Notes: a model not told the origin generated them from the sequence alone. A DNA stretch of 64,000 nucleotides from Stylophora pistillata (GCF_002571385.2 NW_019217794.1:1314116-1378115); one strand, 5' to 3'. Positions 7,001 to 55,917 are shown, counted from the stretch's first letter. Program-made: numbers and translations.

Positions 7001-9179
7001 CGGATGGGCCGACTAAAGCACCACCGCACTGCCCTGGGGCCACTGAAAGAGTTCAAAGAAGAATTGAACGTTAATAAAAGGTAAAACATATTTATCTATT
7101 TAACGACAAAGCTACAAATTTCAAATATTCTTATTCTGTTTGATTACTCCTAATAAATGATTAATTTTTGATCAAGTTAGCCGGTTCCATCTTCATGCAG
7201 AAGACACAGGACACGTCACAATAAAACACAGTCTCATTGACCTATTATTTTCATCGTTTTCCTCTTTTGTCTTTTAATTCCCTTCTGTTTTAGGTCAACG
7301 GTCTTCTGCACCAAGTCATGAGCGAGTTAGCTTTGGTCGCGCACTTGCATGCTCCTCAGACATGAAAGGGATTTGTCAATGGTTAGCAAAGGAATGTAGA
7401 GGTATACACCAATTAACAGGGCCTCTGGCTTGAATCCATGTTAGGTCTATGCGCTTCTTTGAAAACCTCGCAGCTTATGTTAAGCTTTTATTCATCACTA
7501 GTAGAGAATGATTATTATGAAAAGCCGTTAACTGTATGGCTATTTTTAAAGTAAAATGCTTAGCGACATTTAAGCGATTCATAAAATAATTCCTCAGCTT
7601 CACCTGGTCGAGGAGGCGGTCTTGTGGTTGGACCAGGAAAAGGTAATGACTGTGTCACTATGATGTGCGCCAGCACAAACTACGGAAAAATAACAAGAGA
7701 AAATGATTACTGCTTCTCTACACTGTTTGCTAGGAGAAATATAATAAGTTACATTGTCTATTGTAATTATATGACTTTGTGTAAGCGTTTGTTTAGATAG
7801 TGTAACACCGCATTATTTCGCTCAGTATGACAATGTAAAATGTAAATAATATTCATTAGCCAAATATCGCTCTCTCATTTTATGATTTTTTTTTTTATGT
7901 GTTTCTATAAAAGTAAAACTGTTCTACTGGAAATCAATCCATTTTGTTTTCTTGGCGTTGTACATGATTTGTAACAATTTATTCAACTTTTCAATTTACA
8001 TAAGTAGATTGGCCAATCATCTTTGAATGTTATAGCATTTACTACAGTCAAACTGGGGAGCTAATATAGTGTTCTGATAGGTTTAAATAAGTCAGTCATT
8101 CTACTAAAAGTTTCAAACGATCAACCGTTCTCAAGCTGAGCTTAGTAGAGGAATATATCAATTAAAATGCCTAGAAAAGTTAACTCTAGTATCAGTAAGA
8201 ATTGAAGCTATTCAGAGAGACACGTCTTGAACTCGTAAGATTACAATGCTTGAAATTGAATAAACCTTAGACAAAAAAGCAAAGCTAAACAAAATCCAAA
8301 CTAAAACAAAAACTAAAGGGAATATCAAAGTAGCCTTTCTGCATAGAACCATCATTCGTTGTGCACTTTGGTGGAAAATGCATTTTGTAATTGTATCGGC
8401 AATTTCCTTTGAGGCTTGAAAATCGAGAATGTGATACTGAAGTAAGCATATACAAGCCATATTGCAATCGCTCGAATAAGTACCTGAAGTAATTGATAGA
8501 TAGCATAATTATGTGTTTTGTTACGGCAGTAATTTGCTCGCTCAGTAGAAACTTTTTTCTGGTTAATTATTATTATTTCTTTGATGGTAACAGGACAAAA
8601 ACTGAAATTGAGAGCTTCATGAAGGAAACGACATTGACTCTTGGCTCCTATGGCCTATAGCATAATAGATTTTCGCTATTGCATAAATAGCGCTATCTAC
8701 TGCGAGGATCGTGCATCATACGTATCTAATACCGCAGTTCAAAATACAAGAACTTCTTATATTCATTGTATCTCATTTATCACTTTCACGGGTTTATTAC
8801 GAATCAACTTAACGGCCTGCTCCCAGTTGGCTTGTTAGCTCAATTGGTAGAGCGCTGCACTAGTATCGCAGAGGTCAGTGGCTCGAGTCCCGTACAGGCC
8901 TGATTTTTTTCGGGTCTGATTTTCGCTATTGCATAAATAGCGCTATCTACTGCGAGGATCGTGCATCATACGTATAATAGCATTGGTAAGTCATCCTAAC
9001 TACTAGCCGGTTTACCTCTAGAGTAATGCTTCCTCTACCTTATCCATGACCTAGAGCTAATTGACCACTGAATTTACGGAAAATGCTTAAGATCAACACT
9101 TCCAAAGTCTCTTGAAAACAATCGGAAGAAAATGATATATTTTAAGGCTTACCGTCAATGCAGTTACAGGAACCTTCAT
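4058..9179 (-). CDS. Gene A: secreted two-CUB protein with Asp-rich loop insertions (terminal exon unresolved)
   Basis: Exons 9179-9153, 7679-7604, 7042-6877, 5996-5671, 5338-5182 and 4389-4058 have GT-AG borders and join in frame. Signal-like N-terminus MKVPVTALTFVLAHIIVTQS. CUB motifs CGG..SPNYPGNYP..CVW..F..E.C.D..FKSD...RGF.A.Y. Confidence 0.85.
4497..4701. mobile_element. tRNA-like repeat flanked by ~75-bp inverted repeats
   Basis: 4497-4573 is complementary to 4627-4701. The core has A-box (TAGCTCAATTGG) and B-box (GGTTCGAATCC) motifs. Absent from the mirror arm. Confidence 0.7.
6010..6335. repeat. Degenerate (GAT/AAT)n low-complexity tract in gene A intron 3
   Basis: Trinucleotide-periodic AT-rich tract visible directly. 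Confidence 0.8.
8668..8974 (+). mobile_element. tRNA-like repeat with ~57-bp direct terminal repeats and ATAATAG target duplication
   Basis: 8668-8724 equals 8918-8974. tRNA-like core TAGCTCAATTGGTAGAGC...GCTCGAGTCC. The empty site is seen at ~47658-47675. Confidence 0.8.
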
Positions 9180-13303: not shown

Positions 13304-15692
13304 ATGATGAAGTCTTTCCTCCTCGCCTTGACGGTAAGCTACAAAAAGTTAATCGCACTTTGGAAGAAAAAAAAGTCTTGACTCTTACTAGGGCGGCACA
13401 GTACATTGTACACACAAAAGCGTACCTTTTCTTCAAACGCCATGCTAGATTTTACCCGATACCTAACAACAATTTAATGAAAACTGTTGAATTTTTGTAG
13501 GCAGTGATAACACTCACATGGACCGTAGAATCGGCGCCATATCCTAATTTGATGGATACAGAAATAAACTATTTCCTTAGACACCAGGAACAAGGTATGA
13601 AATCACAGATGGAATTAAACCAATGTAATAACACAAGGTTCCTCGAGGTTATGTTTTCCTATGTATTAGGTCATTGGAATCTTTAACACGCAACATCTTG
13701 TCAACATATCTCCCTTCAAATTGTTTTATTTCAAATCAAGATAACCTAGTTGTCTCCTTGTTAACTCTACCTATTTTTTTTTTGACTGCTTGTCGGCTTA
13801 TGTTTTGAAATTGGGTTGCATATGAATCATGTCTGAGTGTTATTGTAATTTGGCAGTGACAGCCCACAGTTTTGAGCAAAGGAATTTTTTGATCAAAATA
13901 AAACCGAAAACATAGTTAATGTCAGAAGAGGTAGCGAAAGTTTGTGAAGTTTTTAAGTTTCTTCTTCCCGGAGTACCCTTCTTTTTGCATTCTAAAATTC
14001 ACTCCTTTATTGAACTCGTTTTCCAGCTCCCGTGGCTCCCGCTGGTTTGAGATGTTACATATGCTCCGCGAATTGTTCCACGACTCAGACTCCAGGTAAC
14101 GGCTGCAGATCCGGCCGTAGCTGTTACACCATGCAGGCTTTTGATACCGCCCTAAACACCTCTGTGGTAAGAAAGGGATGCATTCCACAATTCTTCTGCG
14201 CTCAGAATCGGGCATGCACGTTTTTGAACCAAACTCGAAATGGTGCATTGGGATCGTGTTCCATCAATTGCTGCAGTACTCCATTATGTAATGGTCCACC
14301 TCTTCCGACGACTCAACCCATAACAACCACAGCACCACCAACCACGACCGTGCCTCCAACTACGACCACTGCACCTCCAACGACAGTTCCGACAACTGTG
14401 CCGACCACAGCACCAACTACAGCCCCAATTATACCCGGTAATTAAGAAGCTAACCACATCGGTTGAGACGATTTATTTTTTTTCTGATAACTCAGTAATT
14501 TTGGTAGAGAATTTTTCGGCGGTCACATTAGCTTGATACTAGTAACGTTCCAAGTTGTAAAGAGAGAGGGTGAATTTTTTTGCCGAAATAGCAGAGGTAT
14601 TAAAAATTTTCAGAGAAATATTGGTAGGAGTTCGATAATATGGGTACAATATAACAATCATAACGGTCAAAAACGTCACACAAATCGAATTGGTTCTCTC
14701 TGAGTGCATGATAAACAAACTGTCATTTATATATTTTCTTATATTGCAGGACAATATTTCCAAGACGTTGAAGATTCTATATTTTTGTTTTTCAGGGGTA
14801 TGCGGTGGTCCACTTACTCCTCCATCTGGACAGTTTTCATCGCCATTTTTTCCACTCAGTTATCCAAACAATGCTCACTGCGTTTGGACTATTATGGTTC
14901 CACGCGGGTCTGTTTTAAAGATTGATTTTCTCGCATTCGACACTGAAGAATGGTGGGTGAATAAATGTTACTTGTTCCCTTGCTTGATACGCAATGTATT
15001 TCGCCCTTATGATCTATCATCGTTGGAATTTTTTTGTGTACCAACTGAACATATCCCAAATTCTTCACGGCTATGGCTTAAATGGATAGAAGCACAGAAT
15101 TCGCGCGAAGGAATACAAGAATTTCAAGATTTAGTAGTTCATGGCGTAGAATTTATATACTTAAGCTGTTAAATTCGCTGGCAACAACCTTAAAAATGTT
15201 GGCGATTGAGTTTGGAATCCCCCAGAAATAATTAAGGGTCCATTCATTATTGATCATTGGTGGGAAGAAGTTAAAGGGGAATCACATGGTTTTTAATGGG
15301 GAATGGAAGGGGAAACCAGTCGTCGTCAACAATGTTTAAAGGGGGGACTTCAGAAAAGTGACTGCAAATTAACTGCCAATGTCGGGGATCATGTAAATTC
15401 ATCGAGACCTCAACCAAATTTCGATCCCCGTCCCCTTGGGCGATAATTGATACCGGTCCCTTGGTGAACAGAGATAACTGAGTGTCTTTGGAGCTCTAAA
15501 ACCATGTTTATTATCCAACTGTGCTTCGTAGAGTTTAAATAACGTCCAAAACGAGTACAAATATCTCCCAGTATTTGTACTCCAGAGAATCGTAAATAGA
15601 TATCCGCGAAATGTTCCCGCACTGAAAGAAAAATTTGGCGTGTTGGATAATAAAGTCTTAAAGGTTTTTTTGTTTGTATTTTGCCTTACGGA

Positions 15693-15728
<36 letters not shown>

Positions 15729-18700
15729 GAAATACTACACAACAAAAAGTTTAATAAGATATATGTATTTCCTGGTTTCTAAAAAGACCAGTTCAAACAG
15801 TTGCATCACGTACATTATATAGTCTATTTTTTGCTTCTTTTTTACAGCTTTGATTCCCTTCATATATATGTGGGAAGAAGGTTGGTTAGACGTCTCTCTG
15901 GGGATGATGCTGACGATGACGACGATGATAAATTTGAAAAATGTGACAAGGATGACAAGGATGATGGTGATGATGGGGAAGGTATCTTTGGCTGGTACTT
16001 CAACCGAGATGAAGACATGGATGATAATTCTGTCACTATTCAAGGAACAGGAGAGATGATAAGACTCGTTTTTGTGTCCGACTACAGTATTACCAAGAGA
16101 GGATTCTTTGCTAGATATAATGTATTGAGAGGTAAGTTGATGTGGTGTAAATAAAGTAAAAACCTTGTAGATATGTTGTGCGTTAATAGTGCGCATCGAC
16201 CGATATTTGAGGAAATTAACGTCGAATTCTGGGATACAGATAACACAGATAAAAAACATTTTGAGGAGCTCTCCTTAACGAGCAGTTATTGATTAGCACC
16301 AACTGAGGAGTTGGGTACGATATTGTACGGTTCATTATGCTTCGCAGTTTTGACTTGAGCGATATTTCACATCAGACAGATACAACTTAAATATTGTGTC
16401 ATGTTTAGCCGGAAAGTAAAAGTACTCCTCTATGTTTTTATCGAATTATATTGGGATCATGATCCTTTCGGTTCAACTAAGATCTGATATGGAAAGGCCA
16501 TCTGTATTGTTTGATCGAATTGTGTACCTGCCGTAAATAAATATACTGTCAGACGAGAATTGAACATGTCCATGATCAACACATGCCATTGACTGAAACG
16601 CAAGCGCTATAACATCATGTCTTTATGAAATACAAAATAAATTTTAAACCTGTCTCGAAACTCTCTGTTTGAACCCAAGTTCGATATCTGTTATCATTTA
16701 TAACTATCAGCGTGGCTACTGATTGCTGATCATTTCGAAAAACTTAAAAATGTCGTATTTTCTTTCGCACTAGCACTTTGTGGGGGCCCACTGGCGTTGC
16801 CATCCGGAACCTTCAGATCCCCAGGTTATCCTGGCAAGTACCCGGATGACGTCAAGTGCATCTGGACAATCAGAGTTCCACCAGGATCTACACTAGAATT
16901 GGATTTTCGCTTCTTTCAAACTGAAAAATGGTAAAGAATATTGCACTAGCCTTTTCAGAGTGCTTTCCGGTTTAATGTCGTGGGACCGAGAAAGAAAAAA
17001 AAGGAAAATATCCCAAAAAAACATTTAACAAGGTGCCAGTGAGTCATTATAAAGCCGCCGCCCAGTGAGTCATTATAAAACCGCCGCCCATTAGCCTAAT
17101 GGATAGTGCGCTGGACTGCTGTGCGGGGGGTCGAGGGTTCGAGCCCCGGCCGGACCAACACTCAAGGTCTTAAAATAATTGAGAAGAATTTGCTACCTTT
17201 CTATTACATCTGAAAATGGTTAGATATTCTAGTCTTCTCGGATAGGGACGAATAAATGGAGGTCCCGTCTCCTGCAGGGTTAGGGGTAGGAGACGTTAAT
17301 TTCCCACGCACGAGATTACTGTGTGATGGATGTCCTCCCCGGGGTGGGATGGTGGGTACAAAGGCGTTAGGTGTCAATTGGGACGAAAGTCCTGTTCCTT
17401 TCCCCTGCCACTCCCGTGGCGAATGGATTAAACCTAAACCTAAACCTGTACGCAAGAACGGTAAACGCGAGGAACAAAAACAGGTTTGGTTTTAGTTTTG
17501 CATTTGATATTTTGAGAGAATGGCGCCAGTTAATTGAATGAACCACAAAGCGAAGTTCATATAGCCGCACAATCTTGGAGTATTATGAATTTCAATTGAA
17601 AACTAGCAAGTTGACTGTTAGCGATAACTGGCTNNNNNNNNNNNNNNNNNNNNNNNNNNNNNNNNNNNNNNNNNNNNNNNNNNNNNNNNNNNNNNNNNNN
17701 NNNNNNNNNNNNNNNNNNNNNNNNNNNNNNNNNNNNNNNNNNNNNNNNNNNNNNNNNNNNNNNNNNNNNNNNNNNNNNNNNNNNNNNNNNNNNNNNNNNN
17801 NNNNNNNNNNNNNNNNNNNNNNNNNNNNNNNNNNNNNNNNNNNNNNNNNNNNNNNNNNNNNNNNNNNNNNNNNNNNNNNNNNNNNNNNNNNNNNNNNNNN
17901 NNNNNNNNNNNNNNNNNNNNNNNNNNNNNNNNNNNNNNNNNNNNNNNNNNNNNNNNNNNNNNNNNNNNNNNNNNNNNNNNNNNNNNNNNNNNNNNNNNNN
18001 NNNNNNNNNNNNNNNNNNNNNNNNNNNNNNNNNNNNNNNNNNNNNNNNNNNNNNNNNNNNNNNNNNNNNNNNNNNNNNNNNNNNNNNNNNNNNNNNNNNN
18101 NNNNNNNNNNNNNNNNNNNNNNNNNNNNNNNNNNNNNNNNNNNNNNNNNNNNNNNNNNNNNNNNNNNNNNNNNNNNNNNNNNNNNNNNNNNNNNNNNNNN
18201 NNNNNNNNNNNNNNNNNNNNNNNNNNNNNNNNNNNNNNNNNNNNNNNNNNNNNNNNNNNNNNNNNNNNNNNNNNNNNNNNNNNNNNNNNNNNNNNNNNNN
18301 NNNNNNNNNNNNNNNNNNNNNNAAATTCACAGTGATGATTACCTCAAAATTTTGCAAGGGGGTCGTAAAGTACGAACACTAAGCGGTGTTTACAGATACA
18401 GCTTGTTTGGATGGGGGAATGATGATGACGACGATTGCGATGGTGATGACCTGGATGGTGATGGTGACAAGGATGGCGAAGATGGCGAATGGGGGGAAGA
18501 TGATGAATATGACAGTGAAGAAAGTCCCAGAAAAAGGTTCTACCCATCGGTACACAGGTTTCCCTCTCCAGCAGGGAATCGTTTTGGTTTTCCAACGAGA
18601 GCCCCGATTGGCGCCCCATATGTTACGGGAGTCCTTATTCCAGGAACGGGAGAGCTGGTATCGATTATTTTCAAAGCTGATGACGACGATGTCACTGAAA

Positions 18701-19267
18701 AGGGTTTTCAAGCAGTCTACCGTGTTAGACCAGGTGTGTTGATGATCATCAGGTTTTTTACTTGGAAATGACTTATTCTGTTTGTACATATGACGCTAGT
18801 TGAGCGACATTGCTAATCAAAGACGCTTGTCATTGAGTTCTCTGTTGTGTAGTGATAGAGTATGGGTGAAGTTCATCCTTTCGGAGACGAACTAAGATTC
18901 TATCCTACCTTCCATGTTACTCCACCAAAATTAAAAATTTCGTGCAATTTGGATGAATTATTAATTTTACATTTGATTTCATCTTTCATAAATTGGACTT
19001 TATTATTCCTTTCCTTTCTTTGATCCTTTAAAAGTTATCTGCAGTAAGTAATAATTCAAGTTCGACTTCCTTCATTTAATTGAAGATGTTAGACAAGACA
19101 TGAATATTCTTCGTTGTGCAGTTTCCTATTTGAGAAACCCACCAACCAGAGAACGATTTCTTGGAGCATAAAAGTCTATAAAATTTATTTAAATTTGAAA
19201 ATATTAATTGCATAAATTAAATTTTATCTGTTCTTTATCTGTTACAGGGGCAGCATTTCATGGATGA
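13304..19267 (+). CDS. Gene B: secreted Ly6/uPAR domain, Thr/Pro stalk and two Asp-loop CUB domains
   Basis: Exons 13304-13333, 13501-13594, 14027-14437, 14796-14952, 15848-16131, 16774-16930, 18333-18733 and 19248-19267 join in frame. Signal-like MMKSFLLALTAVITLTWTVES; three-finger pattern LRCYIC...CCSTPLCN; ends GAAFHG-stop. Confidence 0.88.
17081..17447 (+). mobile_element. tRNA-derived SINE with (TAAACC)n tail
   Basis: A/B boxes; body shared with the copies at 29548, 52176, 54505 and 55639. Empty site at ~38185-38210. Confidence 0.85.
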
Positions 19268-29790: not shown

Positions 29791-30044
29791 TCTCAACCTT
29801 ATCATTGTAACTAGACACGTTTGTTGTTTAGAGTGCATGAGACTTTCTTTCTTTCTTCTTTCTGCACCGGTATTGTAGAGGTCATGGGTTCGAATCCCAT
29901 ACAGGCCTGATTTTAACTACTGCTTAAGCAGTGTTCGTTACTGCGTTATCGAGTTAAGATTCCTAAATTGTATTGTGTAGTTAGTTAGAATGTCACCAGA
30001 AATCAAATTGGAATTGATTATTTAAATTACATGTTTTCTATTAC

Positions 30045-33000
30045 CTTTTGAAACAAAATACGTCGTGTAAAAGCCCTTGCCAGTATTCCGTCGATCCGCT
30101 TTGAATATAATCGATATCTTCTCGCCCGTTCCCCGAACAGTCACCCGGTCAACAAACGAGAATCGTTGATGGCCTTTAATCTGGGACCCTTTGCGATTTC
30201 TTACCCGAGACCCATAGCGGTTCCTTGCTCGTCGGACACGGTTATATCTACCATACTTTCTCTTTGAAAAACTAACAGCATCATCAAGATTTTCGTGAAG
30301 GATATTTCTGTCATCATCATTTATATCATCGTTATAGTCGTCATCGTCTTCATCATCGTCATCATCATCGTCGTCACCATTATCATCATCGTCATCACAA
30401 TCGTCATCATTCTGAAACACAGATCTTCTATCATTTCCGCCTCTATACCTGCCATAGCGGCCGTACCGACCAGTCAGTCGACGAATCAAGCGACGACCTC
30501 GGTATATTTTCACGTAATCATCACTGAAAAAAAACATCAAACGTGAATGCAAAGATGAGCGTAATCAGAAGAAGAAATACATGCCCTCAACTGGTATGCA
30601 ATTATCATAAAAACTAACTAAATAAATAGTAATATAAACAATTAAAACTTACCAGCGTTCAGTTTCGAAAGTTCGAAAATCCAGTCTCAGCACTGCTCCA
30701 CGTGGGACATGTAGGGTCCATTTGCACTGGACGTCGTTTGGATAGCTTGCAGGGTAATTAGGAGATTTGAAGTTACCCGAGGAGCCAGGTAAGGTTCCTC
30801 CGCAGCTGCGTGCTAAAATGAATAGAGATTTTTAACGTTCAGCGATGAGGTTTCTATAGATTGCTTTGATGAGGTAAAATACCTCAGAGGACGGTTGGAT
30901 TCGTTCTCCAGGGCCACTTGTTCGACGGCCGAGTAGCCCTAATCCAAGGTTGAATTTCAATCCAGGTTTCCTCATTCCTTTGTTCAAAAGCCTGTTTGGG
31001 ATGATTTCCTCTATTCTCTTTAGAGCATCCAAAAACCAAATTATAAACAAAAATGATTTTGCTGAAAATTCTCTGATAGATTTTAGATCTGAAATCAAAT
31101 TTCACTCTAACCCACGGTTATCTTATCTTAGCTTTAAAAATCCCTGCGCGGATTCCGTTCCCATTTATAACATAGATATTAAAATTACCAATAACATCAG
31201 TCTTACAGGTCATGGGTCGAAGGTTAGAGAACACAGAGAAGCTTGGAAAAACTCCTTCCGCGATAAATGACTTGAGGAAGAAAGTTTACCTTTCGGAACA
31301 CGATAAGACCAAATAAGAGGGAACACAGGGAGTAAGAGATCTATCAGGGTGTTTTTGTCAGCTCAGAAGTTCAGATAGTTGTTGGTTCTTATGGAGACGT
31401 AATATTGTGCTGTTCAACAGAATAATTTTTTTATAGAATTGTAGAGTGAGTGAGTAACCTAGCATCACGTTGTATTGGGCAAAGAACCCTCTCTTCGTAA
31501 CGCTGCGGTCAGATTTAAAAATAACGCGTATTATCTTGCCAGTTCCTTTAATGGAAATCGTTTTATCTCTTTTTCGAAGACTTCCAGTCAAACGACGAAG
31601 CAGTCGTCGGTCCAAGTATATTTTGACATAATCATATCTACAGAATTAAAAAGAATGGAAAAATCGGACAGGTTAATAACTTGCGCTCATGTTTGGCACG
31701 TTTTGGGGGCACTGTTTGAAAAAAGTAAAGTAAAAAAAAGAAGCAATGTAGGTGCCACCTAGCTCAAAATATGCTCTTCATTACCCTCAAGAAATGATCA
31801 TATTTTCATAAAAGGTGCCAATGCCGAAGCCAAGGTCATTTATAGTCACTCAGAACACTGCCTAACCCTTTTATTCTGTATTGGAGTCACCCTCGACTAG
31901 AAGAAGAACCTTTGTTGATTTATACCCCTCAGGGTAGCCCCTTCAGATACAAAAAGCTGTTTGTGATCAATGGGAGCCTATTTACTAAAAAACTGAAAAA
32001 ATTCTGACTAACCTTCGCTCTGTATAAAAGTTAACGAATTTTATCTTTAACGTTGATCCTTGTGGTACAGACATGATCCAGGTGCAGTCAGCGTTGTTAG
32101 GGTACTTACTGGGATAATTTGGAGATGAAAGGGTCCCAGATGAAGCAGAGAGCGAACCACCGCATTTGCCTGTGTATTAAAACGTATAAATGTAGGGCAT
32201 CAATTTACAACCAAACTGCGAAATTGCAAGCGAACTACTAAAAGAGAGAAAAACGAACCTGAAGCTGAAGAAAGGAGAAATGAACGATCGAAATTAGAGA
32301 AATTTGCAATCTCATTTCATTTTTCGTTTATATGTATGTGAATCAACTCTTAAAGTATTATATCTTGATAAGTAAAATAAAACTCGTTGTTTTGACATAT
32401 AATATTTTTAAATATGTCAAGCAAGGATACTTGATAGGTTAAAAAAGTGAAAATTAAAAGCCTGCGTCTTTTAAAATTGGACTATTTATAAAACTGAACC
32501 AAAGAAATATCAAAAGCGGAGTTGAAAGAATTGAATTCTGACCCAATTGAGTGCGTCGCTTCAAATATCCCCAAATCTCCTTCCTAAATGTCCTATCTTG
32601 ATTAATACTATTTGAATGCATAAGATGTTTCCATTCATTCTACAACTATAGCAGATGAAATTTCTGCTTGAACTTGACGAATTTACCTGATGGAGTCACA
32701 GGAATTGTCACAGCAGTTGAGGGTTGTTCTGTGGTTGTCGGCAGAGGTGGAGTCGTTGATGAAGCACTTTGCTGAGCATTGCACCCTTGCGTATGACAGC
32801 ATTCAAACAAGCAGGACTCAATGGAGCCATTACGAGATAAGTTAAGGAAATCGCATCCGCGATTTTGAGCACAAAGAATGCTTGGAAGACATCCTTTAGC
32901 AAAGATGTAGCTGTTCTGAGCAGTGTCAAATGCTTGTAGGTTGTAGCAGCGAAAACCCGTTTCGCAAAGTTGGAGAGTTTGTGCAGCCGTGCAGTTCTCC

Positions 33001-37109: not shown

Positions 37110-40100
37110 TTATCCGTGAAATGCTGCCCCTGCAATAGATGGATAAGAGCTAAAATTTAATTCCAGCAATTAATATTTTCAAATCTAAATAAATTATAAA
37201 GATGTTTAAGCTCCAAGACATCGTTCNTAAATGAAGGAAATCGAACTTGAATTATTGCTTACTGCAGACAACTAATCATTTATCTAAATAGCACGAAGTT
37301 TTAATTTTAGGAGGAGTAACATGGAAGGTAGGATAGAATCTTAGTTCGTCTCCGAAGGAATCGACTTCTCCCATACTCTACCACTAGGCAACAAAGAACT
37401 CAAATGACAAACGTCTTTGATTAACAATGTCGTTGAACTGGCGTCATATGCACAAAACAGAATAAGTCAATTCCAAACATAGTAAACAAATTGATGAACA
37501 TCAACACACCTGGTCTAACACGGTAGATTGCCTCAAAACCCTTTTCAGTGACATCGTCGTCATCAGCTTTGAAAATAATCGACACCAGCTCTCCCGTTCC
37601 TGGAATAAGGACTCCCGTAACATATGGGGCGCCAATCGGGGCTCTCTTTGGAAAACCAAAACGATTCCCTGCTGGAGAGGGAAACCTGTGTATCGATGGG
37701 TAGAACCTTTTTCTGGGACGTTCTTCACTGTCATATTCATCATCTTCCCCCCATTCGCCATCTTCGCCATCCTTGTCACCATCACCATCCAGGTCATCAC
37801 CATCGCAATCGTCGTCATCATCATTCCCCCATCCAAACAAGCTGTATCTGTAAACACCGCTTAGTGTTCGTACTTTACGACCCCCTTGCAAAATTTTGAG
37901 GTAATCATCACTGTGAATCGAAAAAAAGAAAAAAAAAAAAAAACGAAAAAAATAAGCTTTGAGTATTGTAGCATGGTTGTTCTAGATTTTCCAATTCTCT
38001 GAACTAAGCCAGTTATCGCTAACAGTCAACTTGCTAGTTTTCAATTGATAGTCATAGTACTCCAAGATTGTGCGGTTACATGAACTTCGCTTTGTGGTTC
38101 ATACAGTTAACTGGCGCCATTCTCTCAACAGATCAAATGCAAAACTAAAACCAAACCTGTCTTTGTCACTCGCGTTTACCGTTCTTGCCTTTATAATGAC
38201 TCACTGGCACCTTGTTAAAGTTTTTTGGGATATTTTCCTTTGTTTTCTTTTTCGATCCCACGACATTAAACCGGAAAGCACTCTAAAAAGGCTAGTGCAA
38301 TATTATTTACCATTTCTCAGTTTGAAAGAAGCGAAAATCCAATTCTAGTGTAGATCCTGGTGGAACTCTGATTGTCCATATGCACTTGACGTCATCCGGG
38401 TATTTGCCAGGGTAACCAGGGGATCTGAAGGTTCCGGATGGCAACACCAGTGGGCCTCCACAAAGTGCTAATGCGAAAGAAAATACAAAATGTTGAAACA
38501 ATTAATTTGAATATATGAAAATCATATATGCGTGCTGTCTCACGAAATGTATGAAAGAGATCCTCGCAGCATTAAACCCTACTTACCAAGTATTGGAAGT
38601 AAGGTCGATACGGGATTTGACCCCGTGACCACTGCGATACCGGTGCAGTGCTCTACCTGCAACTGAGCTAACAAGCCAACTGGGAGCTGGTCATTATATT
38701 GGTCCGTATTAAAGCCGTCGAAATGATAAAATGTCGAATTTTTTCTAAATAATCAGCGATCAGTGTCTACGCTGATAGTTATAAATGATAATAGATATCA
38801 ATTTTAAGTTCAAACGAAGAGTTTAGAGACAGGTTTGAAATTCATTGTGTAATTCATAAAGACATGATGTTATAGTGCTTGCGTTTCAGACAATAGCATG
38901 TGATGATCATGGACATGTTCAAGTCTCGTCTGACTGTACATATATTAATTTACAGCAGGTACATCATTGGATCAAACAATACAGATGGCCTTTCCATATC
39001 AAACCTTCGTCGAACCGAAAGGATCATGATCCCCAAATAATTTGATAAAAACAAAGAGGAGTACTTTTACTTTCCCGCTAAACATGACATAATATTTGTG
39101 TTGTATCTGTCTGCTGTGAAATATTGCTGAATTCAAAACTGCGAAGCCTAATGAACCGTACAATATTGTACCCAACTCCTCAGTTGGTGCTAATCAATAA
39201 CTGCTCAATAAGGAGAGCTCGTCAAAATGTTTTTTTATCTGTGATGGTAACCCATAATTCGACGTTAATTTCCTCAAATATCGATCAATGTGCACCTTTA
39301 AAACCTATCATATATCTACAAAGGTTTTTACTTTATTTACGCCACATCAACTTACCTTTCAATACAATGTATCTGGCAAAGAATCCTCTCTTGGTAATAC
39401 TGTAGTCGGACACAAAAACGAGTCTTATCATCTCTCCTGTTCCTTGAATAGTAACAGATTTATCATCCATGTCTTCATCTCGGTTGAAGTACCAGCCAAA
39501 GATACCTTCCCCGTCATCACCATCATCCTTGTCATCCTTGTCACATTTGTCAAATTCATCATCGTCATCATCGTCCGCATCATCCCCAGAGAGACGTCTA
39601 ACCAACCTTCTTCCCACATATATATGAAGGGAATCAAAGCTGTAAAAAAGAAGAAAAGAAAACATTCCATTTACGCGGTGTAACTGTCTGAAGTGGCTTA
39701 TTAGATACCATGAAATGCATATATCTTATTAAACGTTTTGTTGTGTAGAATCGCTGAATATTTTTACGAGTTGTGCTGTATTTTGACGAGCCCGTAGGGC
39801 AAGTCAAAATACAAACAACGAGTAAAAATACTCAGCGATACTACACAACAAAACCTTAATAAAATATTTATTATCGCGCACGCAAAATTGTTCTTTCAGT
39901 GTGGGAACACTTCGCGGATATTTCTTTACGGTTCTCTGGAGTACAAATACCGCGAGATATTTGTACTCGTTTTGGACGTTATTTGTACTCTATACGACGC
40001 ACAGTTGGATGATAAACATGGTTATAGAGTTTTCATCCCCCCCCCCTTTACTTCCAGTTAATTTGCAATCAATTTCCTCAAGTCCTCCCTTTAAACTCTG

Positions 40101-43100
40101 TTGACGACGACTGGTTCCCCCCTCTATTCCCCCCAAAGAAAACATGTGATTCCCCTTAAATTTCCTCCTTTATGGTGAATAATGAATGGTCTTTTATCTA
40201 CCTCTGGTGGATTCCATATTCAATCGCCAACATCTCTAAGGTTGTTACCAGCGAATTTAATGGCTTAAGTACATAATTCTACACCATGAACTACTAAATC
40301 TTGAGATTCTTGTATTCCTTCTAGTGAATTCCATGCTTCTATCCATTTACGCCATAGCCATTAAGAATTTAGGATATGGTGAGAAGGTACACGAAAAAAT
40401 TCAAACCACGATGAATAAGGGCGAAATAAGTTGCCTATGGAGCAATGGAACAAGGAAAATTTATTCACCCACCATTCTTCAGTGTCGAATGCGAGAAAAT
40501 CAATCTTTAAAACAGACCCGCGTGGAACCATAATGGTCCAGACACAGTGAGCATTGTTTGGTTAACTGAGTGGAAAAAATGGGGACGAAAACTGTCCAGA
40601 TGGAGGAGTAAGTGGACCACCGCATACCCCTGAAAAACAAAGATACAGAATCTTCAACATCTTGGAAATATTGTCGTGCAATATAAGATAATATATGAAT
40701 GACAGTTTGCTGATCATGCGCTCAGTTTGATGATGAGAGAGCCAATTCGATTTGTGTGACGTTTTTGACCATTACAATCATTTTATCGTACTCATATTAT
40801 CGAGCTCCTACCAATATTTCTCTGAAAAGTTTTAATGCCGCTGCCATTTCGGTAACAATATCCGCCCTTTCCCTTTACGACTTGGAACGTTACTGGAATC
40901 AAGTTAATGTGACCGCCGAAAAATTCTCTTCCAAAATTATTGAATTATCAGAAAAAAAGTCGTCTTAACCGATGTCATTAGGTTCATAATTACCGGGAAT
41001 AATTGGGGCTGTAGTTGGTGCTGTGGTCGGCACAGTTGTCGGAACTGTCGTTGGAGGTGCAGTGGTCGTAGTTGGAGGCACGGTCGTGGTTGGTGGTGCT
41101 GTGGCTGTCGTCGGAAGAGGTGGACCATTACATAATTGAGTACTGCAGCAATTGATGGAACACGATCCCAATGCACCGTTTCGAGTTTGGTTCAAAAACG
41201 TGCATGCCCGATTCTGAGCGCAGAAGAATTGTGGAATGCATCCCTTTCTTACCACAGGGGTGTTCAGGGCGGTATCAAAAGCCTGTATGGTGTAACAGCT
41301 ACGGCCGGATCTGCAGCCGTTACCTGGAGTCTGAGTCGTGGAACAGTTCGCGGAGCATATGTAACATCTCAAGCCCGCGGGAGCTGGAAAATGTGTTAAA
41401 TAAATGAGTGAGTTTTACAATACAAAAGAAGGATACTCCGGTAAGAAGAAACTTAAAAAGTTTGTCACACTGCCTTTTCCGACATTACCTATCTTTTCGG
41501 TTTTATTTTGATAAAAAAATTGCTTTGCTCAAAACTGTGGGCTGTCACTACCAAATTACAATAACACTCAGACATGATTCATATGCAACCCAATTTCAAA
41601 ATATTAACCGGCAAGCAGTCAAAAAAATAGGTAAAGTTAACAAGCAGAGGACTAGGTTACCTTGATTTGAAATAAAACACTCTCAAATACTTGGTAGAAA
41701 TTTGAAAGGAGACATGTTGACGAGATGTTGGGTGTTAAAGATTCCAGTGACCTAATACATCGAAAAACATAACCTCAAGGAAACTTGTGTCATTATACTA
41801 GTTTAATTCCATTTGTGATTTCATACCTTGTTCCTGGTGTTTAAGAAAATAATCTATTTCTGCATCCATCAAATTAGGATATGGCGCCGATTCTACGGTC
41901 CATGTGAGTGTTATCACTGCCTATATAAATTTAACAGTATTTGATGAAATTGTTGTTAGTTATGGGGTAAAATATAGAGGAAATGTCATTGCCAAATTAC
42001 AATAACACTCTGAGGAAAAGTTATGCTGTTGTGTGTATAATGTAATGTACCACCTGAGTTAGAGTCAGGGTTGTTTGGGTAAAATTTCTCTTCCAAAATA
42101 CATTTTAATAATTTGGTATTTCAATTCTTAAGCAATAAATATAACCAATTATAAAAAAGGCTTAAACATAAGGAGGATATATTTTTAAATGCAATGTCTG
42201 CATAAAGGAAATACCAGCTCATGAAAACGATATTTATGCCGACATGTAAGACTATAAACCTTACAGGTTTGCAGACAAAGAGAAGCTTAAACCACAGACA
42301 TAAAAGCTTAATTTACATTGATACTTATTGGTAATCAATATAAAGCGGGTTAAGGATTTCTTTCCAGCAGATGTCCTTATATTTATCGATATGGGTACGT
42401 CAAAATTAATAAGGCAAGAAGAAAAACAACTAAAAGTTAGCAAAACTTTCCTCGTTACCAATCAAAACATTTCTCGATAGTTTAGGACAGATAAGTTATT
42501 GTTGTCACCCTTAAATTAAGTTCCCAATCTTTGGTTTTCACTTGAGATACTTCTGTTGAGCTCATTATGAGCGAATGAAGTTTCATGGCGCTGGATGCGT
42601 GAAAAAAAGCTGTATCATCTTGTTCAGCTGTTTATAGCCTCGAAATGACAAATTCCTCATATTATCCTAATAGATTTCATATATTGTGATCGGGAAAAAA
42701 ATTATGAGAAATTTAAATTGTGATGAGACTGAAAAAGATGAAAACACAGTAGATACTGGTCTTCAATAATTTTGTTGGCTGCATGTTAGTGGCTTTGAGG
42801 ACGTGTTTGGTAAACAAATAATCAACGAACTGAATGTTAAGAGACCAGCTTCAGTTAAGAGTGTCTCGTAAGGAAAAAAGGATTTTCATAAAATTCTCCT
42901 CTCCAATCGCAAACGTAAAAAAAAAAGAAAAGAAAGACAAAAACAAATGGTCACATCTAAAGTGAAACAGGTAAAATGCAGCACAAACAGTCGATAGAAA
43001 CTGTGCATAGCCATGTGATTTGTTTAAAAAATGTAGAATAGGTTAATACGATTGTTGGAGCGTGCAACGGAAGTTTTCATACAAGCAATCTCCCCACAAG

Positions 43101-50400: not shown

Positions 50401-53400
50401 AAATCCATTCAAGCCAGAGGCCCTGTTAATTGGTGTAGACCTCTACATTCCTATGCTAACCATTGACAAATCCCTTTCATGGCTGAGAAGCATACGAATG
50501 CGGGACCAAAGCTAACTCGCTCATGACTTAGTGTAGATGACACAGTTGGCGTAAAACAAAAGGGCATTAAAAGACAAAAGAGCAAAACAATGAAAATAAT
50601 AGGTCAACGAGGCTCTGTTTTATTGTGATGTGTCCTCTGTCTTCTGCATGAAGATGGAACCGGCTAACTTAATCAAAACTGATCATTTATTAGGAGTAAT
50701 CAAACAGAATCAGAAAACTTGAAATTTTTAGCTTTGTGGTTCAATAGATAAATATGTTTTACCTTTTATTAACGTTCAATTATTGTTTTAACTCTTTCAG
50801 TGGCACCAGGGCAATGTGGTGGTGCTTTAGTCGGCCCATCCGGGAACTTAGCATCTCCTAATTACCCTGGAAACTACCCCAGCAATGCGTATTGTGTGTG
50901 GACCGTAACAGTACCTCCGGGCTCACAATTCAGGATTGACTTTCTCTTCATCGAAACAGAACCTTGGTGAGTCAAAACCTGTTTTGGTTATGGTCTATGT
51001 TTTTATTTTTGCGCCTTCTTTTCTTTATCAGCCTTCTTTTTTCGTCTCTGCATTAACACCGAGTTTGCAAAGCGTGAGAAGGGATTCCAGTATGATGCTC
51101 CGTTTAAATTTGAAGCTATTTTATGCAATTCAGAAGTTTTAGTGTATAAACCATATCATTTCCCGACGCAGATATGGTGTGAGATGATAGATTTAAAAGT
51201 GAATTATACAGGCATTTTTTCAACGGTTGAAAAGTGCTATCAGTAATCTGCAGACAGAACTTAGAAAGTGGCTTCAGAAAGTGTATTTGTTACTTAAAAC
51301 CGTAATTAAAAAATTAAACATTGCTTGCTCTTGCAATCATTGTCACCCGTGATGTTTTGAAATACTTTTGAATTGCTCATTCAATTGCGAAAACTTCCTC
51401 CAGAAAATCACGATCCGCAAAATAAACCAGAGTTGATGCGCTAAAAAGTACCCAATGTCAAGGGAAGTGGAAAACAACCAAATAACTTAAAATCTCTCGA
51501 CAACTAATATAAGTTTTTGTTCTCATTGTTAACATGACTACAATTAATATTACTATAAATCAACATCGTCATCATTATCAATATCATCACCATTCTTATT
51601 ATGATCATAGTTATCCTTACAATACCATTTTGGTTCTGATTATGAATACCACTATCGTTATTATTGCTCTGATTATCATAATCGTTATTATCAACATCAT
51701 AACCACTATTATTCTCATAGTTATCCCAACAATATCATATTTGTTCGCGTTATGAATATCGCTACCATTGTTATTAAAATTATCATCATCGTCATCATTA
51801 TCAATATCATCACCANNNNNNNNNNNNNNNNNNNNNNNNNNNNNNNNNNNNNNNNNNNNNNNNNNNNNNNNNNNNNNNNNNNNNNNNNNNNNNNNNNNNN
51901 NNNNNNNCTTATTAACCAAGCGTGAGGGCCGTACTGGGAGAATATCAGCCCGAGGTCTTGACAGTATGGACCGAGCACAGCGAGCTCCATACAGAAAAGA
52001 CCGAGGGCCAATATTCTTCCAGTACGGTCCCGAGCAAGCTTGGTTAATAAGAGAATTATTGTACGACTGAAGTTCAAAGGGACACAAGTGCGGTATCATT
52101 CGGAACCATTCGGGACAGTGCCCAGTCCAATACTGAGAAAATATTGACCAGCAATAGAGCATTTTGATTAGTTAACCGCCTCCCGGTTAGCTCAATTGGA
52201 TAGAGCGCTGGACTGTTGTGCGGGAGGTCGAGGGTTCGAGCCCCGGCCGGACCAACACTCAGGGTCTTAAAAATAATTGAGAAGAATTTGCTACCTTTCT
52301 ATAACATCAAGAAATGGTTAGATATTCTAGTCTTCTCGGATAGGGACGAATAAATGGAGGTCCCGTCTCCTGCAGGGTTGGGGTAGGAGACGTTAATTTC
52401 CCACACACGAGATTACTGTGTGATGGATGTCCTCCCCTGGGGTGGGATGGGTGGGATATAGGGCGCACTTAATAAGGAGCCTCGCTCTGTTGTGCGACCC
52501 TCACCACACTCTGGTGAAAGTGAGTAAATTAAATTAAATTAAATATCATAACCATTATCATTATCATCATGATAGTTATCCCAACAATACCATATTTGTT
52601 CTAATTATGAATATCGTTACCATTTTTATTAAATTGTCATCATCGTCGTCATTATCAATATCATCACCATCGTTATTATTATTGTTCTCCTCAGTATTAT
52701 AATTTCTTATTTATTGCAGCTATGATTTGGTGAAAGTCTATCAGGGAAGAAGGCTGATCCGTCGTCTGACTCACGGAGGGGAATCTAATGACAAAAAATA
52801 TTTCAAGAATAAAAATGATGAGAACGACGACGACGAGTGTGATGACGATGATGAGGACCAAAAGGATGATAATGATGACGATGAAAAAAATGGAAAGAGA
52901 AAATACACGTTTGCCGAGCCTCTGAGAGCAGACAGTAAAGCAAAAGTTGTCTCCGTTCATGGTAATGGGGAACCCGTGAGGATTGTGTTCAAATCCGATC
53001 CATGGGTGACAAGGAGAGGATTCTTTGCCCATTACACCATGGGGAAAGGTAATAACTGTGATGATACATTAATACAATCAAGAGATAATCCAATACAATA
53101 AAGATACAGCAATCCTAAATTGATATCTGCTGGTAATTTTAAAACTGATCACGACATTTGTTGATAATACGTGAGAAATAACACTCCTGTATCACACATT
53201 ATGATGACGAGAAGCCTTTGATTGTTAAGCAAATTCTCCTCGTCTACAGCTCAGGAAATGTATTGAGAACTGTATGAAAAATATGTAATTTGACTTTTTT
53301 ATGTTGTAGAGGTTTAATTATTACCTCTTGACAATCCATCTCCTAAATCTCCTTGACTTAACAATCTATTCTCTCTTTTAGCCCTATGTGCTGGTCCTCT

Positions 53401-54414
53401 GGCTTCACCATCCGGGAACTTTACTTCGCCAGGTTTTCCAGCAAATTATCCGAACAATGTTGAATGTAAATGGACTATCACTGTTCCTCTTGGATCAACT
53501 TTGGTTTTCAATTTCCGCGCCTTTGAAACAGAACGGTGGTAAGTTCACTGTTCTTCAGCAAGTTGTAGTGATAGGAGGAAATGGAAATCATCAAATCATG
53601 TGAAGTGACATGGCCTTTAATATGTCCCAAAACGTATGCTTTTGTATCAGCTCGAGGTTTGGAAATAAAAGCCTTGTGTCACATTGAGAACTGCTCAAAC
53701 TATGATAGAACTATTAAGACCATATAAAGAAAAAAATCCTGAAAACATCCTGAAAACCTTAATCGTTTCAATACTTCCATAAAAGAGATAAACTTTACTT
53801 ACCTCGGGAATAACACGGAAATAATCTATCCTCGTATCTCTCTTTTCTTTTGAAATATATCTTATACGCAGGGTTCTGTTTCAGAGTAACTTGGCTAAAC
53901 AGGACGCTTAATTCAAGTTTTCTAGATATTTTGTATCCAGCTTCTACACGTTTATGAGCGAGATCGTAGATTTTCCTCTTTTATATAAATTTCAAAAGCA
54001 CAAAAGAGAATAACGTACAAAGTTGTGAAACAAAGTAATGCAACTTTGTTTCACAACTGTTAGTAAAAGCTTTTTTTCCCTTTTTTTTTTGTAGTTTTGA
54101 TCACGTCAAGATTCTCCGTGGCTTTCGGGAGATACGTAGTTTGAGTGGCATATACGGGGCTTATTCGTGGTTCACAGGGAGACACGACGATTTCTTAGAT
54201 GACGATTGTGATGATGACGACGATGATGATGACGATGACGACGACGATTGGATGAAAAAATTTCGTCATGGATTCGGGATGACAAAAATTCATGGTTTTC
54301 CATTCCTGCCTCGAGTATTCATCCTGGGAAATGGTGAACACATATCGACTAATTTCAAGTCCGACAAGATTATCACCTTTAAAGGATTTGATGCCACTTA
54401 CAAAGTTGTACGAG
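47455..54414 (+). CDS. Gene A': inverted paralog of gene A (terminal exon unresolved)
   Basis: Exons 47455-47481, 50163-50238, 50801-50966, 52720-53048, 53382-53538 and 54095-54414 join in frame; N-terminus MKALVTALAFVLAYIIVTQS. Confidence 0.85.
49450..50085 (-). mobile_element. Penelope-like element 3' remnant (GIY-YIG C-terminus, inverted terminal copy, degenerate hammerhead)
   Basis: Peptide SKPVARHFNLPGHS...RKNLEQKLIFQTGSLNPTGINERFSF. 49687-49770 is mirrored at 49999-50083. Hammerhead-like motif at ~49568-49601. Confidence 0.8.
51908..52172. mobile_element. Second copy of the 28266-28580 hairpin repeat
   Basis: Reverse-complement match to 28305-28572. Confidence 0.75.
52176..52544 (+). 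mobile_element. tRNA-derived SINE with (TAAAT)n tail
   Basis: TAGCTCAATTGG A box, GGTTCGAGCC B box, shared body. Confidence 0.85.
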
Positions 54415-55638: not shown

Positions 55639-55808
55639 AAACCCACCCATCCCACCCCAGGGGAGGACATCCACCACACAGTAATCTCGTGCGTGGGAAA
55701 TTAATCCTACCCCTACCCCTGTAAGAGACGGGCCTACGGTTTTATTCGTCCTTATCCAGGAAGACTAGAATATCTTTCTATTTCTTGATGTTATAGAAAG
55801 GTAGCAAA

Positions 55809-55839
<31 letters not shown>

Positions 55840-55917
55840 CGGTCCGGCCGGGGCTTGAACCCTCGACCTCCCGCACAACAGTCCGGCGCTCTAACAATTG
55901 AGCTAACCAGGAGGCGG
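55639..55917 (-). mobile_element. tRNA-derived SINE inside a probably redundant assembled block
   Basis: 55639-56576 repeats 54581-55523 across an N gap. Confidence 0.7.

What the first reader, a model, noticed from the sequence alone, without database searches (positions are those of the whole stretch)
30045..32169. A cysteine inside the poly-Asp tract co-varies with the TE-x-C cysteine: a disulfide-stapled acidic loop
Seen: in A, A', B, B' and C CUB2, the exon junction creates TE-x-C, and each acidic insert contains exactly one Cys (DDECDDD, DDDCDDD, FEKCDKD, DDDCDGD). CUB1 of gene C has TERR instead and lacks both the insert and its Cys. Established: the second CUB disulfide links the Cys before the YD motif to a later Cys. 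Inference: the partner Cys now sits inside the Asp tract and pins it to the domain surface, giving a constrained acidic surface rather than a floppy tail.
Basis: partly seen in the sequence, partly recalled or inferred. Interest (0 to 1): 0.78.

Follow-up and report, generated by a model that had tools for sequence, protein, structure and literature searches.

The report
Conserved cysteine tethers coral poly-Asp CUB loop
In a cluster of coral (Stylophora) skeleton-type acidic proteins, each calcium-binding CUB domain carries a poly-aspartate loop with one strictly conserved cysteine, which most likely forms the ordinary second CUB disulfide and ties the start of the acidic loop down next to the calcium site.

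Summary
The window holds five two-CUB genes (A, B, C, B', A'). In 9 of the 10 CUB domains a split codon (TG|T or TG|C) makes TE-x-C, and the acidic insert holds exactly one Cys. CUB1 of gene C has TERR (AG|A), no insert and only the first Cys pair. RNA contigs verify both junction codons of gene C.

Homologues come from 10 named coral species plus unnamed assemblies. Every CUB with the junction Cys has 1 or 3 Cys in the loop. Every CUB with Arg there has none. I found no exception.

The canonical Cys4 site maps 2-3 residues after L[ST]G, so the insert Cys lies 13-23 residues further along the same loop. In AlphaFold2 models, 2 of 3 insert Cys are small confidence islands inside disordered tracts. 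No coordinates were available, so the S-S distance was not measured.

The family is already partly described. [quoted passage not shown] It does not mention the disulfide.

Verdict: the Cys is real and conserved, and it is probably the retained second CUB disulfide with the loop expanded on both sides. "Constrained surface" is overstated, because 27-82 residues after the Cys stay predicted disordered.

The parts
32013..32164 (-). Gene C CUB1, N-terminal exon (from the Cys1 codon). It ends in AG of the split Arg codon (T-E-R-R).
   Evidence: Pfam CUB positions 1-50, E=1.4e-13. Splice donor AG|gttagt. An RNA contig ends at 32013 and continues with the start of the next exon.
31460..31637 (-). 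Gene C CUB1, C-terminal exon. No insert, no Cys. The whole domain is 110 aa.
   Evidence: Pfam CUB positions 56-110.
30653..30804 (-). Gene C CUB2, N-terminal exon. It ends in TG (30654-30653) of the split Cys3 codon.
   Evidence: Pfam CUB positions 1-49, E=1.1e-12. Donor TG|gtaagt. RNA joint 30653/30523.
30045..30523 (-). Gene C CUB2, C-terminal exon. The first base, T (30523), completes the Cys3 codon. Order along the exon: beta6-beta7 hairpin, a basic/aromatic stretch of 23 aa, the insert Cys, an Asp-rich run, a basic Arg/Lys-rich stretch, then strands beta8-beta10.
   Evidence: RNA contigs cover 30045-30523.
30397..30399 (-). Codon TGT of the insert Cys of gene C CUB2 (Cys339 of P0012), in the context NDDDCDDDD.
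   Evidence: AlphaFold2 pLDDT island at residues 338-340.
4059..7028 (-). Gene A. CUB1 exons 7028-6877 and 5996-5672, insert Cys codon 5878-5876. CUB2 exons 5333-5182 and 4389-4059, insert Cys codon 4277-4275.
14801..18732 (+). Gene B. CUB1 exons 14801-14952 and 15848-16130, insert Cys 15942-15944. CUB2 exons 16779-16930 and 18333-18732, insert Cys 18436-18438. The intron holds an N run, which was not filled.
37511..40624 (-). Gene B', an inverted paralogue of B and the source of XP_022799127.1 'tolloid-like protein 2'. CUB1 exons 40624-40473 (with an in-frame stop) and 39639-39357, insert Cys 39545-39543. CUB2 exons 38462-38311 and 37910-37511, insert Cys 37807-37805.
50815..54413 (+). Gene A', an inverted paralogue of A. 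CUB1 exons 50815-50966 and 52720-53047, insert Cys 52838-52840. CUB2 exons 53387-53538 and 54095-54413, insert Cys 54207-54209.

Best explanation
The genes encode coral acidic matrix-type proteins, evidently secreted. Their architecture is a three-finger-like module plus a Thr/Pro mucin linker in genes B and C, followed by two tandem CUB domains that carry the acidic residues of the Ca2+-binding CUB subset.

Each CUB keeps the first disulfide (Cys1-Cys2). In 9 of 10 domains it also keeps the second one. Cys3 is encoded across the phase-2 intron and sits between the two Ca2+-ligand positions: the Glu of T-E and the Asp two residues after the Cys.

The partner of Cys3 is the single Cys in the insert. 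I read this as the canonical Cys4, with the loop between strands beta7 and beta8 expanded on both sides. There are 13-23 residues, partly aromatic or basic, before it. An Asp-rich run and then a basic or aromatic stretch (27-82 residues) follow it.

The disulfide ties the start of the poly-Asp run to the rim of the Ca2+ site and splits the insert into a short and a long sub-loop. The long acidic sub-loop probably stays flexible and would bind Ca2+ or mineral.

Shown: the sequence pattern, the splicing, the conservation, the even Cys count, the CUB fold and a secretory-type N-terminus in orthologues. Inferred: the actual S-S bond, Ca2+ binding and a role in the skeleton.
For: Cys pattern and split codons in all 10 domains.

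Junctions seen in RNA. Spliced transcript assemblies of relatives (P0002, P0009, P0013) read TE-x-C.

The junction Cys aligns to Cys3 of cubilin CUBs.

Census of more than 40 domain instances from Stylophora, Pocillopora (2 species), Acropora (4 species), Desmophyllum, Oculina and Orbicella, plus unnamed assemblies. Cys3 present goes with 1 or 3 loop Cys. Arg at that position goes with 0 loop Cys and no insert. No exception was found.

The insert Cys is an invariant or near-invariant column in inserts that otherwise vary in length.

Tree of domain cores: the CUB1 and CUB2 clades each have 99/99 support. The Cys-less C-type CUB1 lies inside the CUB1 clade, which suggests a secondary joint loss.

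AlphaFold2 pLDDT islands sit at C339 (P0012) and C289 (P0007).

The fold matches tandem Ca2+-binding CUBs: PCPE-1, neuropilin, cubilin, MASP, TSG-6.

The acidic positions T-E, x-D and F-x-[SA]-D are present in all ten window CUBs.

Orthologues P0002, P0006, P0007 and P0010 start with hydrophobic signal-like N-termini, which fits an oxidising secretory route.

The preprint 10.64898/2026.03.24.713908 describes the same topology, with a Ca2+ site at each domain, for D. pertusum SAARP12 and S. pistillata XP_022799127.1, which is gene B'.
Against: There is no direct evidence of the bond. No coordinates were returned, so no S-S distance was measured, and there is no mass spectrometry.

The insert Cys is 13-23 residues downstream of the canonical Cys4 position. 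A lost Cys4 plus a newly gained Cys cannot be excluded.

One of the three insert Cys examined (C128 of P0007 CUB1) shows no pLDDT island. Such islands could also simply reflect a conserved alignment column.

The independent evolutionary events behind the co-variation are few. Absence of the insert and absence of its Cys are confounded in the C-type CUB1.

No outgroup outside stony corals was recovered, so the order of events is inferred by parsimony only.
Confidence: 0.74

Rival explanations
1. The insert Cys, and possibly Cys3 too, forms intermolecular disulfides. These would cross-link the acidic proteins into dimers or into the skeletal organic matrix network, rather than forming an intradomain staple.
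For: The insert Cys sits in a long, exposed region predicted to be disordered. C128 of P0007 has no confidence island. Matrix proteins are often cross-linked (general knowledge).
Against: Cys3 would then be left unpaired in every domain. The strictly even Cys count per domain is what intradomain pairing predicts, including the joint loss in the C-type CUB1 and the joint gain of two Cys in the 'D-type' CUB2. Confidence islands sit at 2 of 3 insert Cys.
Confidence: 0.12
2. The canonical Cys4 was lost and the insert Cys is a newly evolved residue kept for another reason. Examples are metal coordination within the Asp cluster, or pairing between the CUB1 and CUB2 inserts. On this reading the link to Cys3 is coincidental.
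For: The insert Cys is not at the canonical Cys4 position. The divergent gene at 58.3-60.1 kb lacks Cys3 yet keeps a Cys just before its Asp15 run and has a second Cys after it. So a Cys at the edge of the acidic run can exist without Cys3.
Against: In all two-CUB family members, Cys3 and an odd number of loop Cys go together within the same domain. Gene C has only one insert-bearing CUB yet keeps the pair, which rules out obligatory CUB1-CUB2 insert pairing. The divergent gene still has an even number of Cys.
Confidence: 0.09
3. The pattern is a by-product of recent gene duplication. On this reading the copies are simply too young to have diverged, and the pattern says nothing about constraint.
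For: A/A' and B/B' are paralogues within one inverted duplication. All five genes sit in one cluster.
Against: The duplicated arms are only 80-95% identical at the DNA level. The same Cys is kept in orthologues from both major stony-coral clades (Acropora versus Stylophora, Oculina and Orbicella), while insert length and sequence change freely.
Confidence: 0.03

Closest known systems
Canonical CUB domain (Pfam PF00431), Ca2+-binding subset (PCPE-1, cubilin, neuropilin a1/a2, MASP, C1r/C1s, TSG-6)
   Same: Pfam CUB hits and a beta-sandwich fold. Cys1-Cys2 are at canonical positions and Cys3 aligns to Cys3. The Glu, Asp and Asp acidic positions of the Ca2+ site are present. Established knowledge, as summarised in PMC6372009: the subset has three conserved acidic residues plus a Tyr.
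   Different: The loop after strand beta7, which normally carries Cys4 2-3 residues after the strand, is expanded to 41-106 residues (window copies). It has an Asp-rich core, and its only Cys lies 13-23 residues into the loop. The spacer between the Glu and Cys3 is also shorter (T-E-x-C) than in the solved CUBs it was aligned to, which need 3-4 extra residues there.
[quoted passage not shown]
   Same: XP_022799127.1 is P0001, the product of gene B' in this window. The preprint describes two beta-sandwiches joined by a short linker, a putative Ca2+ site on each and disordered D/E-rich segments. This matches the models made here.
   Different: The preprint does not call the domains CUB-with-insert. 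It removes the D/E segments as undefined and never mentions a disulfide or the conserved Cys (the word 'disulfide' occurs 0 times). Genes A, C and A' are not discussed there.
Intrinsically disordered coral acid-rich proteins (CARP4/SAARP1, AGARP, acidic SOMP)
   Same: Long Asp/Glu runs in secreted proteins associated with the aragonite skeleton. They are proposed to bind Ca2+.
   Different: Here the acidic run is not a free segment of the chain. It is an internal loop of a folded Ca2+-binding domain, with a conserved Cys at its edge.
Tolloid / BMP-1 / nas-39 astacin metalloproteases and DMBT1 (the automatic names of these proteins)
   Same: They share CUB domains only.
   Different: Pfam finds no astacin catalytic domain and no SRCR or ZP domain. 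The automatic names are misnomers based on CUB similarity.

Membership tests
CUB domain (PF00431) | Match to the Pfam CUB profile above the gathering score | tested here: met
   N-exons alone score 45-51 bits against a cut-off of 21.4. P0012 scores 140 bits, P0002 117 and P0007 119.
CUB domain (PF00431) | Beta-sandwich fold superposable on solved CUB domains | tested here: met
   Foldseek of the P0012 model: PCPE-1, neuropilin and cubilin at E=1e-16. Single CUBs: 6f1d TM 0.76, 2wno TM 0.78.
CUB domain (PF00431) | First disulfide pair, Cys1 (C-G-G) and Cys2 (C-x-W) | tested here: met
   Present in all 10 window CUBs. The pairing itself is inferred from established CUB structures.
CUB domain (PF00431) | Second disulfide pair, with Cys3 before the Y-D motif and Cys4 right after strand beta7 | tested here: inconclusive
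   Cys3 is present and aligned in 9 of 10 domains. No Cys occupies the canonical Cys4 position, 2-3 residues after L[ST]G. Instead, one Cys lies 13-23 residues further along the same loop. The bond was not measured.
Ca2+-binding CUB subset | Three conserved acidic Ca2+ ligands (Glu in loop 5, Asp after Cys3, Asp in the F-x-S-D strand end) plus a Tyr | tested here: inconclusive
   T-E, x-D and F-x-[SA]-D are present in all ten window CUBs. The Tyr position was not mapped residue by residue. C-type CUB2 of Oculina and Orbicella has Asn in place of the last Asp. Definition taken from PMC6372009.
Ca2+-binding CUB subset | Measured Ca2+ binding | not testable with these tools
   Needs ITC, a crystal structure or similar.
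Coral SAARP12 / 'tolloid-like protein 2' acidic two-beta-sandwich proteins | Sequence identity with, or close homology to, the named members | tested here: met
   P0001 = XP_022799127.1 is 96% identical to the gene B query exon and reads letter for letter as the gene B' domains. Desmophyllum homologues are P0008 and its neighbour in L009.
Coral SAARP12 / 'tolloid-like protein 2' acidic two-beta-sandwich proteins | Protein detected in the skeleton | not tested
   Literature only, for the D. pertusum protein, with a citation for the S. pistillata one. The accession of gene C, XP_022799866.1, appears in no paper of the library. [quoted passage not shown] I could not link it to this window.
Tolloid / astacin metalloproteases | Astacin catalytic domain | tested here: not met
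   Pfam finds only CUB-type families in P0012, P0002 and P0007.

The most novel reading that the evidence does not exclude
The Cys3-insert Cys bond places the start of each poly-Asp run directly over the canonical CUB Ca2+ site. A folded, Ca2+-loaded domain would then seed and orient a poly-Asp/Ca2+ cluster, giving a structured mineral-nucleating or mineral-docking module rather than a disordered polyanion.

Coral lineages would tune this module by rewiring the loop disulfides. Examples are three loop Cys in the 'D-type' CUB2, and a Cys pair bracketing the Asp15 run in the divergent gene at 58.3-60.1 kb that has lost Cys1-3. The module would be an innovation of stony corals, made by expanding one loop of an ordinary CUB domain.
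Probability: 0.2. Interest if true: 0.65.

Novelty: new variant of a known kind. Interest (0 to 1): 0.4.

Why it matters
Acidic biomineralization proteins are usually treated as disordered polyanions. Here the poly-Asp tracts are internal loops of folded Ca2+-binding-type CUB domains, and each carries one cysteine conserved across both major stony-coral clades.

If that cysteine forms the second CUB disulfide, the acidic run is anchored beside the Ca2+ site. This gives a concrete, testable model of how a folded scaffold presents poly-Asp to calcium or aragonite. It also names simple mutants (Cys to Ser) with which to test the model.

The result also corrects misleading automatic names (tolloid-like, nas-39-like, DMBT1-like). 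The gain is modest, because the disulfide itself is the ordinary CUB one and the family was described in outline in a 2026 preprint.

Tried and rejected
1. The exhaustive HMMER search with the family profile returned 15,876 hits. Its top 150 were almost all giant multi-CUB proteins of the cubilin/CSMD type, and only three family members appeared. It was useless for finding outgroups or exceptions.

2. The third word search, using the insert-free CUB1 of the Oculina orthologue, gave no new family member and no relative outside stony corals. The ESM Atlas look-up gave only generic CUB clusters. Absence outside stony corals is therefore not established.

3. The look-up of encoding contigs had no record for the two Acropora proteins.

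4. Measuring the S-S distance was not possible. Structure prediction returns no coordinates and no model file reaches the script machine. Only the pLDDT segment boundaries could be used as a proxy.

5. C-exons with inserts do not reach Pfam CUB significance on their own. This is because the insert splits the profile match, not because they are not CUB.

6. Haplotig or assembly artefact as the origin of the A/A' and B/B' copies: rejected, since the arms are only 80-95% identical.

7. Spliced models were never typed into a search tool. Exons were searched by reference, and the database proteins P0012 and P0001 (identical to the local joins) stood in for the joined sequences. Joins were made only inside scripts for counting and for the tree.

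8. The first word search used an open frame that runs through an N gap (read as X), together with the 'region' option, so that full-length proteins fell within the length window. The N stretch was not filled or looked up.

Full report
**What is in the window**

The window is eukaryotic, with GT-AG introns and about 36% GC. Protein matches place it in the stony coral Stylophora pistillata. [quoted passage not shown] P0001 (XP_022799127.1, "tolloid-like protein 2") is identical to gene B'.

A six-frame scan found ten CUB domains in five genes:

| Gene | Strand | Approx. position |
|---|---|---|
| A | - | 4.0-7.0 kb |
| B | + | 14.8-18.7 kb |
| C | - | 30.0-33.0 kb |
| B' | - | 37.5-40.6 kb |
| A' | + | 50.8-54.4 kb |

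Each CUB is built from two exons separated by a phase-2 intron. In the own-genome searches, exons of this insert-bearing kind matched only inside this cluster.

- In nine CUBs the N-exon ends ...T-E-x + TG|GT, and the C-exon starts with T or C after AG. The split codon is therefore Cys (T-E-x-C).
- Each of these nine domains has exactly four Cys: Cys1, Cys2, the junction Cys and one Cys in the acidic insert. The contexts are DDDECDDDD, LDDDCDDDD, KFEKCDKDD / EFDKCDKDD, DDDDCDGDD and NDDDCDDDD.
- CUB1 of gene C ends AG|GT and resumes with A, giving Arg (T-E-R-R). It is a canonical 110 aa long, has no insert and has only Cys1 and Cys2.

RNA supports the splicing. Contigs from three polyA RNA-seq runs carry the joint 30523/30653. 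One contig joins 32013 to the first letters of the 31637 exon. A loose end at 30045 encodes the short C-terminal tail A-H-S-G-R seen in P0012. Spliced transcript assemblies of relatives read the same way (P0002, P0009, P0013).

**What the proteins are**

- Pfam finds two CUB domains and nothing catalytic.
- The AlphaFold2 model of P0012 has two confident beta-sandwiches. Foldseek matches them to tandem Ca2+-binding CUBs: PCPE-1, neuropilin, cubilin, MASP and TSG-6.
- The three acidic positions of the Ca2+-binding CUB subset are present in all ten window CUBs: the Glu of T-E, the Asp two residues after Cys3 and the Asp of F-x-[SA]-D. The definition of the subset is taken from PMC6372009.
- Genes B and C have an upstream Cys-rich three-finger-like exon plus a Thr/Pro mucin linker. 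The Pfam UPAR_LY6 match is weak, E=0.0055 and below the cut-off.
- Orthologues begin with signal-like hydrophobic N-termini.

A July 2026 preprint (10.64898/2026.03.24.713908) reports D. pertusum skeletal "SAARP12". It names S. pistillata XP_022799127.1, our gene B', as having the same topology: two beta-sandwiches with a short linker, a putative Ca2+ site on each and disordered D/E segments. The word "disulfide" does not occur in it.

**Is the insert Cys the partner of Cys3?**

(a) Position. HMMER aligns the junction Cys with Cys3 of cubilin CUBs. The insert-free CUB1 of gene C places canonical Cys4 2-3 residues after L-T-G. The Pfam match of P0002 CUB2 stops at profile position 75 at L-S-G-V-Y, which fits that placement. 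The insert Cys lies 13-23 residues after L[ST]x, so the loop is expanded on both sides of it. Another 27-82 residues follow before the next strand.

(b) Conservation. In alignments across species, the insert Cys is an invariant or near-invariant column. The inserts themselves range from about 40 to more than 110 residues.

(c) Even Cys count. I counted Cys per domain in all family proteins and in genomic loci from Oculina, Desmophyllum and Orbicella.

| State at the Cys3 position | Cys in the loop | Insert |
|---|---|---|
| Cys | 1, or 3 in one lineage (P0005, P0009, P0013 CUB2) | present |
| Arg (C-type CUB1 of Stylophora, Oculina, Orbicella) | 0 | absent |

There is no exception in more than 40 domain instances. 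They come from 10 named species of both major stony-coral clades, plus unnamed assemblies.

(d) History. A maximum-likelihood tree of domain cores, with inserts removed, separates CUB1s from CUB2s at 99/99 support. The C-type CUB1 lies inside the CUB1 clade, whose other members all carry the insert plus the Cys. The simplest reading is one secondary loss of the insert, its Cys and Cys3 together. Relations within the CUB1 clade are not resolved and the root is only a midpoint.

(e) Structure proxy. In the P0012 model, the only residues with pLDDT>=50 between 319 and 347 are D338-C339-D340. In P0007 the island is C289-E290 in CUB2, but C128 in CUB1 shows none.

**Most likely mechanism**

I read the pair as the ordinary second CUB disulfide, retained while the Cys4 loop grew an Asp-rich insert on both sides. 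Cys3 lies between two Ca2+-ligand positions, so the bond anchors the beginning of the poly-Asp run at the rim of the Ca2+ site.

The insert thus becomes a short sub-loop and a long one. The long one is an acidic stretch followed by a basic or aromatic stretch, and it is predicted to be flexible. "Constrained acidic surface" therefore overstates the case: one point is fixed and the rest is not. Because the tract is an internal loop, it was never a tail.

My confidence in the intradomain bond is about 0.74. The rivals are:

- Intermolecular cross-linking (0.12).
- A newly gained Cys kept for another reason (0.09).
- A mere duplication artefact (0.03), which the cross-species conservation and the 80-95% arm identity contradict.

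**Novelty**

The domain, its disulfide and, since 2026, the protein family are known. What is new is the recognition of three things:

- The acidic tracts are expansions of the Cys4 loop of Ca2+-binding-type CUB domains.
- A single conserved Cys sits at their edge.
- The Cys count per domain is even in every domain examined.

This is a useful structural hypothesis for coral biomineralization, but not a new kind of system.

**Limits and procedure**

- No outgroup outside stony corals was recovered. The exhaustive search was swamped by multi-CUB giants and the word searches are exhausted.
- Spliced models were searched exon by exon, by reference, or through identical database proteins. The step of sending a joined sequence to a search tool was left out. 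Joins were made only inside scripts.
- N stretches were not filled.

Noticed in passing
window 1-20400 versus 36000-57500: There is a large inverted segmental duplication centred on gene C. The left arm (genes A and B) and the right arm (B' and A') align in reverse orientation at 80-95% nucleotide identity, introns and intergenic DNA included. That is too diverged for a haplotig, so A/A' and B/B' are true paralogues.
   Followed up: partly
window 40473-40624 (-): Gene B' CUB1 N-exon has an in-frame stop: P-L-S-stop-P-N-N where gene B has P-L-S-Y-P-N-N. The RefSeq model XP_022799127.1 starts at a Met downstream of it and lacks the first half of CUB1. B' may therefore be a truncated gene or a pseudogene, or the assembly may have an error.
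   Followed up: partly
window 58285-60088 (-): A sixth, divergent gene. It has a Cys-rich three-finger-like exon plus a long T-T-T-E-A-P mucin repeat (59612-60088), a degenerate CUB N-exon without Cys1 or Cys2 (59002-59172, no Pfam hit) and a C-exon (58285-58734). The Cys3 position is Gly (GG|G). An Asp15 run is bracketed by two Cys (Y-G-C before it, F-I-C-G-S after it). The Cys count is again even but the arrangement differs, so this may be a rewired loop disulfide. It is single-copy in the genome.
   Followed up: partly
P0005, P0009, P0013 (unnamed coral transcript and genome assemblies): A fourth paralogue type ('D-type') has three Cys in its CUB2 loop: two inside the Asp run and one just before strand beta8. 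Two Cys were gained together. The own-genome search recovered no distinct D-type copy in Stylophora.
   Followed up: partly
L008 24258.., L010 14127.. (Oculina, Orbicella C-type CUB2): The last acidic Ca2+-ligand position reads F-K-S-N instead of F-K-[SA]-D in these two species. The Ca2+ site of that domain may be altered there.
   Followed up: no
window 53387-53395 (+): A' CUB2 starts C-A-G where all other copies have C-G-G.
   Followed up: no
window 32646-33002 (-) and P0012 N-terminus: The RefSeq protein of gene C begins M-L-Y-H-P-S-K and has no signal peptide. The Oculina orthologue P0010 has about 45 more N-terminal residues, including a signal-like segment. The Stylophora model is probably 5'-truncated.
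   Followed up: no
window 31081-31113: A 33-base stretch in the intron between CUB1 and CUB2 of gene C is covered by very deep short RNA contigs (word depth 80-650) in three runs. It is probably a repeat or a fragment of an abundant RNA.
   Followed up: no
window 29860-29910 and 55780-55920: These are short stretches whose sequence resembles a tRNA-derived element (g-g-t-t-c-g-a-a-t-c-c-c type), lying next to N gaps.
   Followed up: no
database names of P0001, P0006, P0007, P0008, P0011, P0024: The automatic names (tolloid-like protein 2, zinc metalloproteinase nas-39-like, CUB and sushi domain-containing protein 1-like, zymogen binding, DMBT1-like) all derive from CUB similarity. In the family members scanned with Pfam here (P0012, P0002, P0007) no protease, sushi or SRCR domain was found.
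   Followed up: yes
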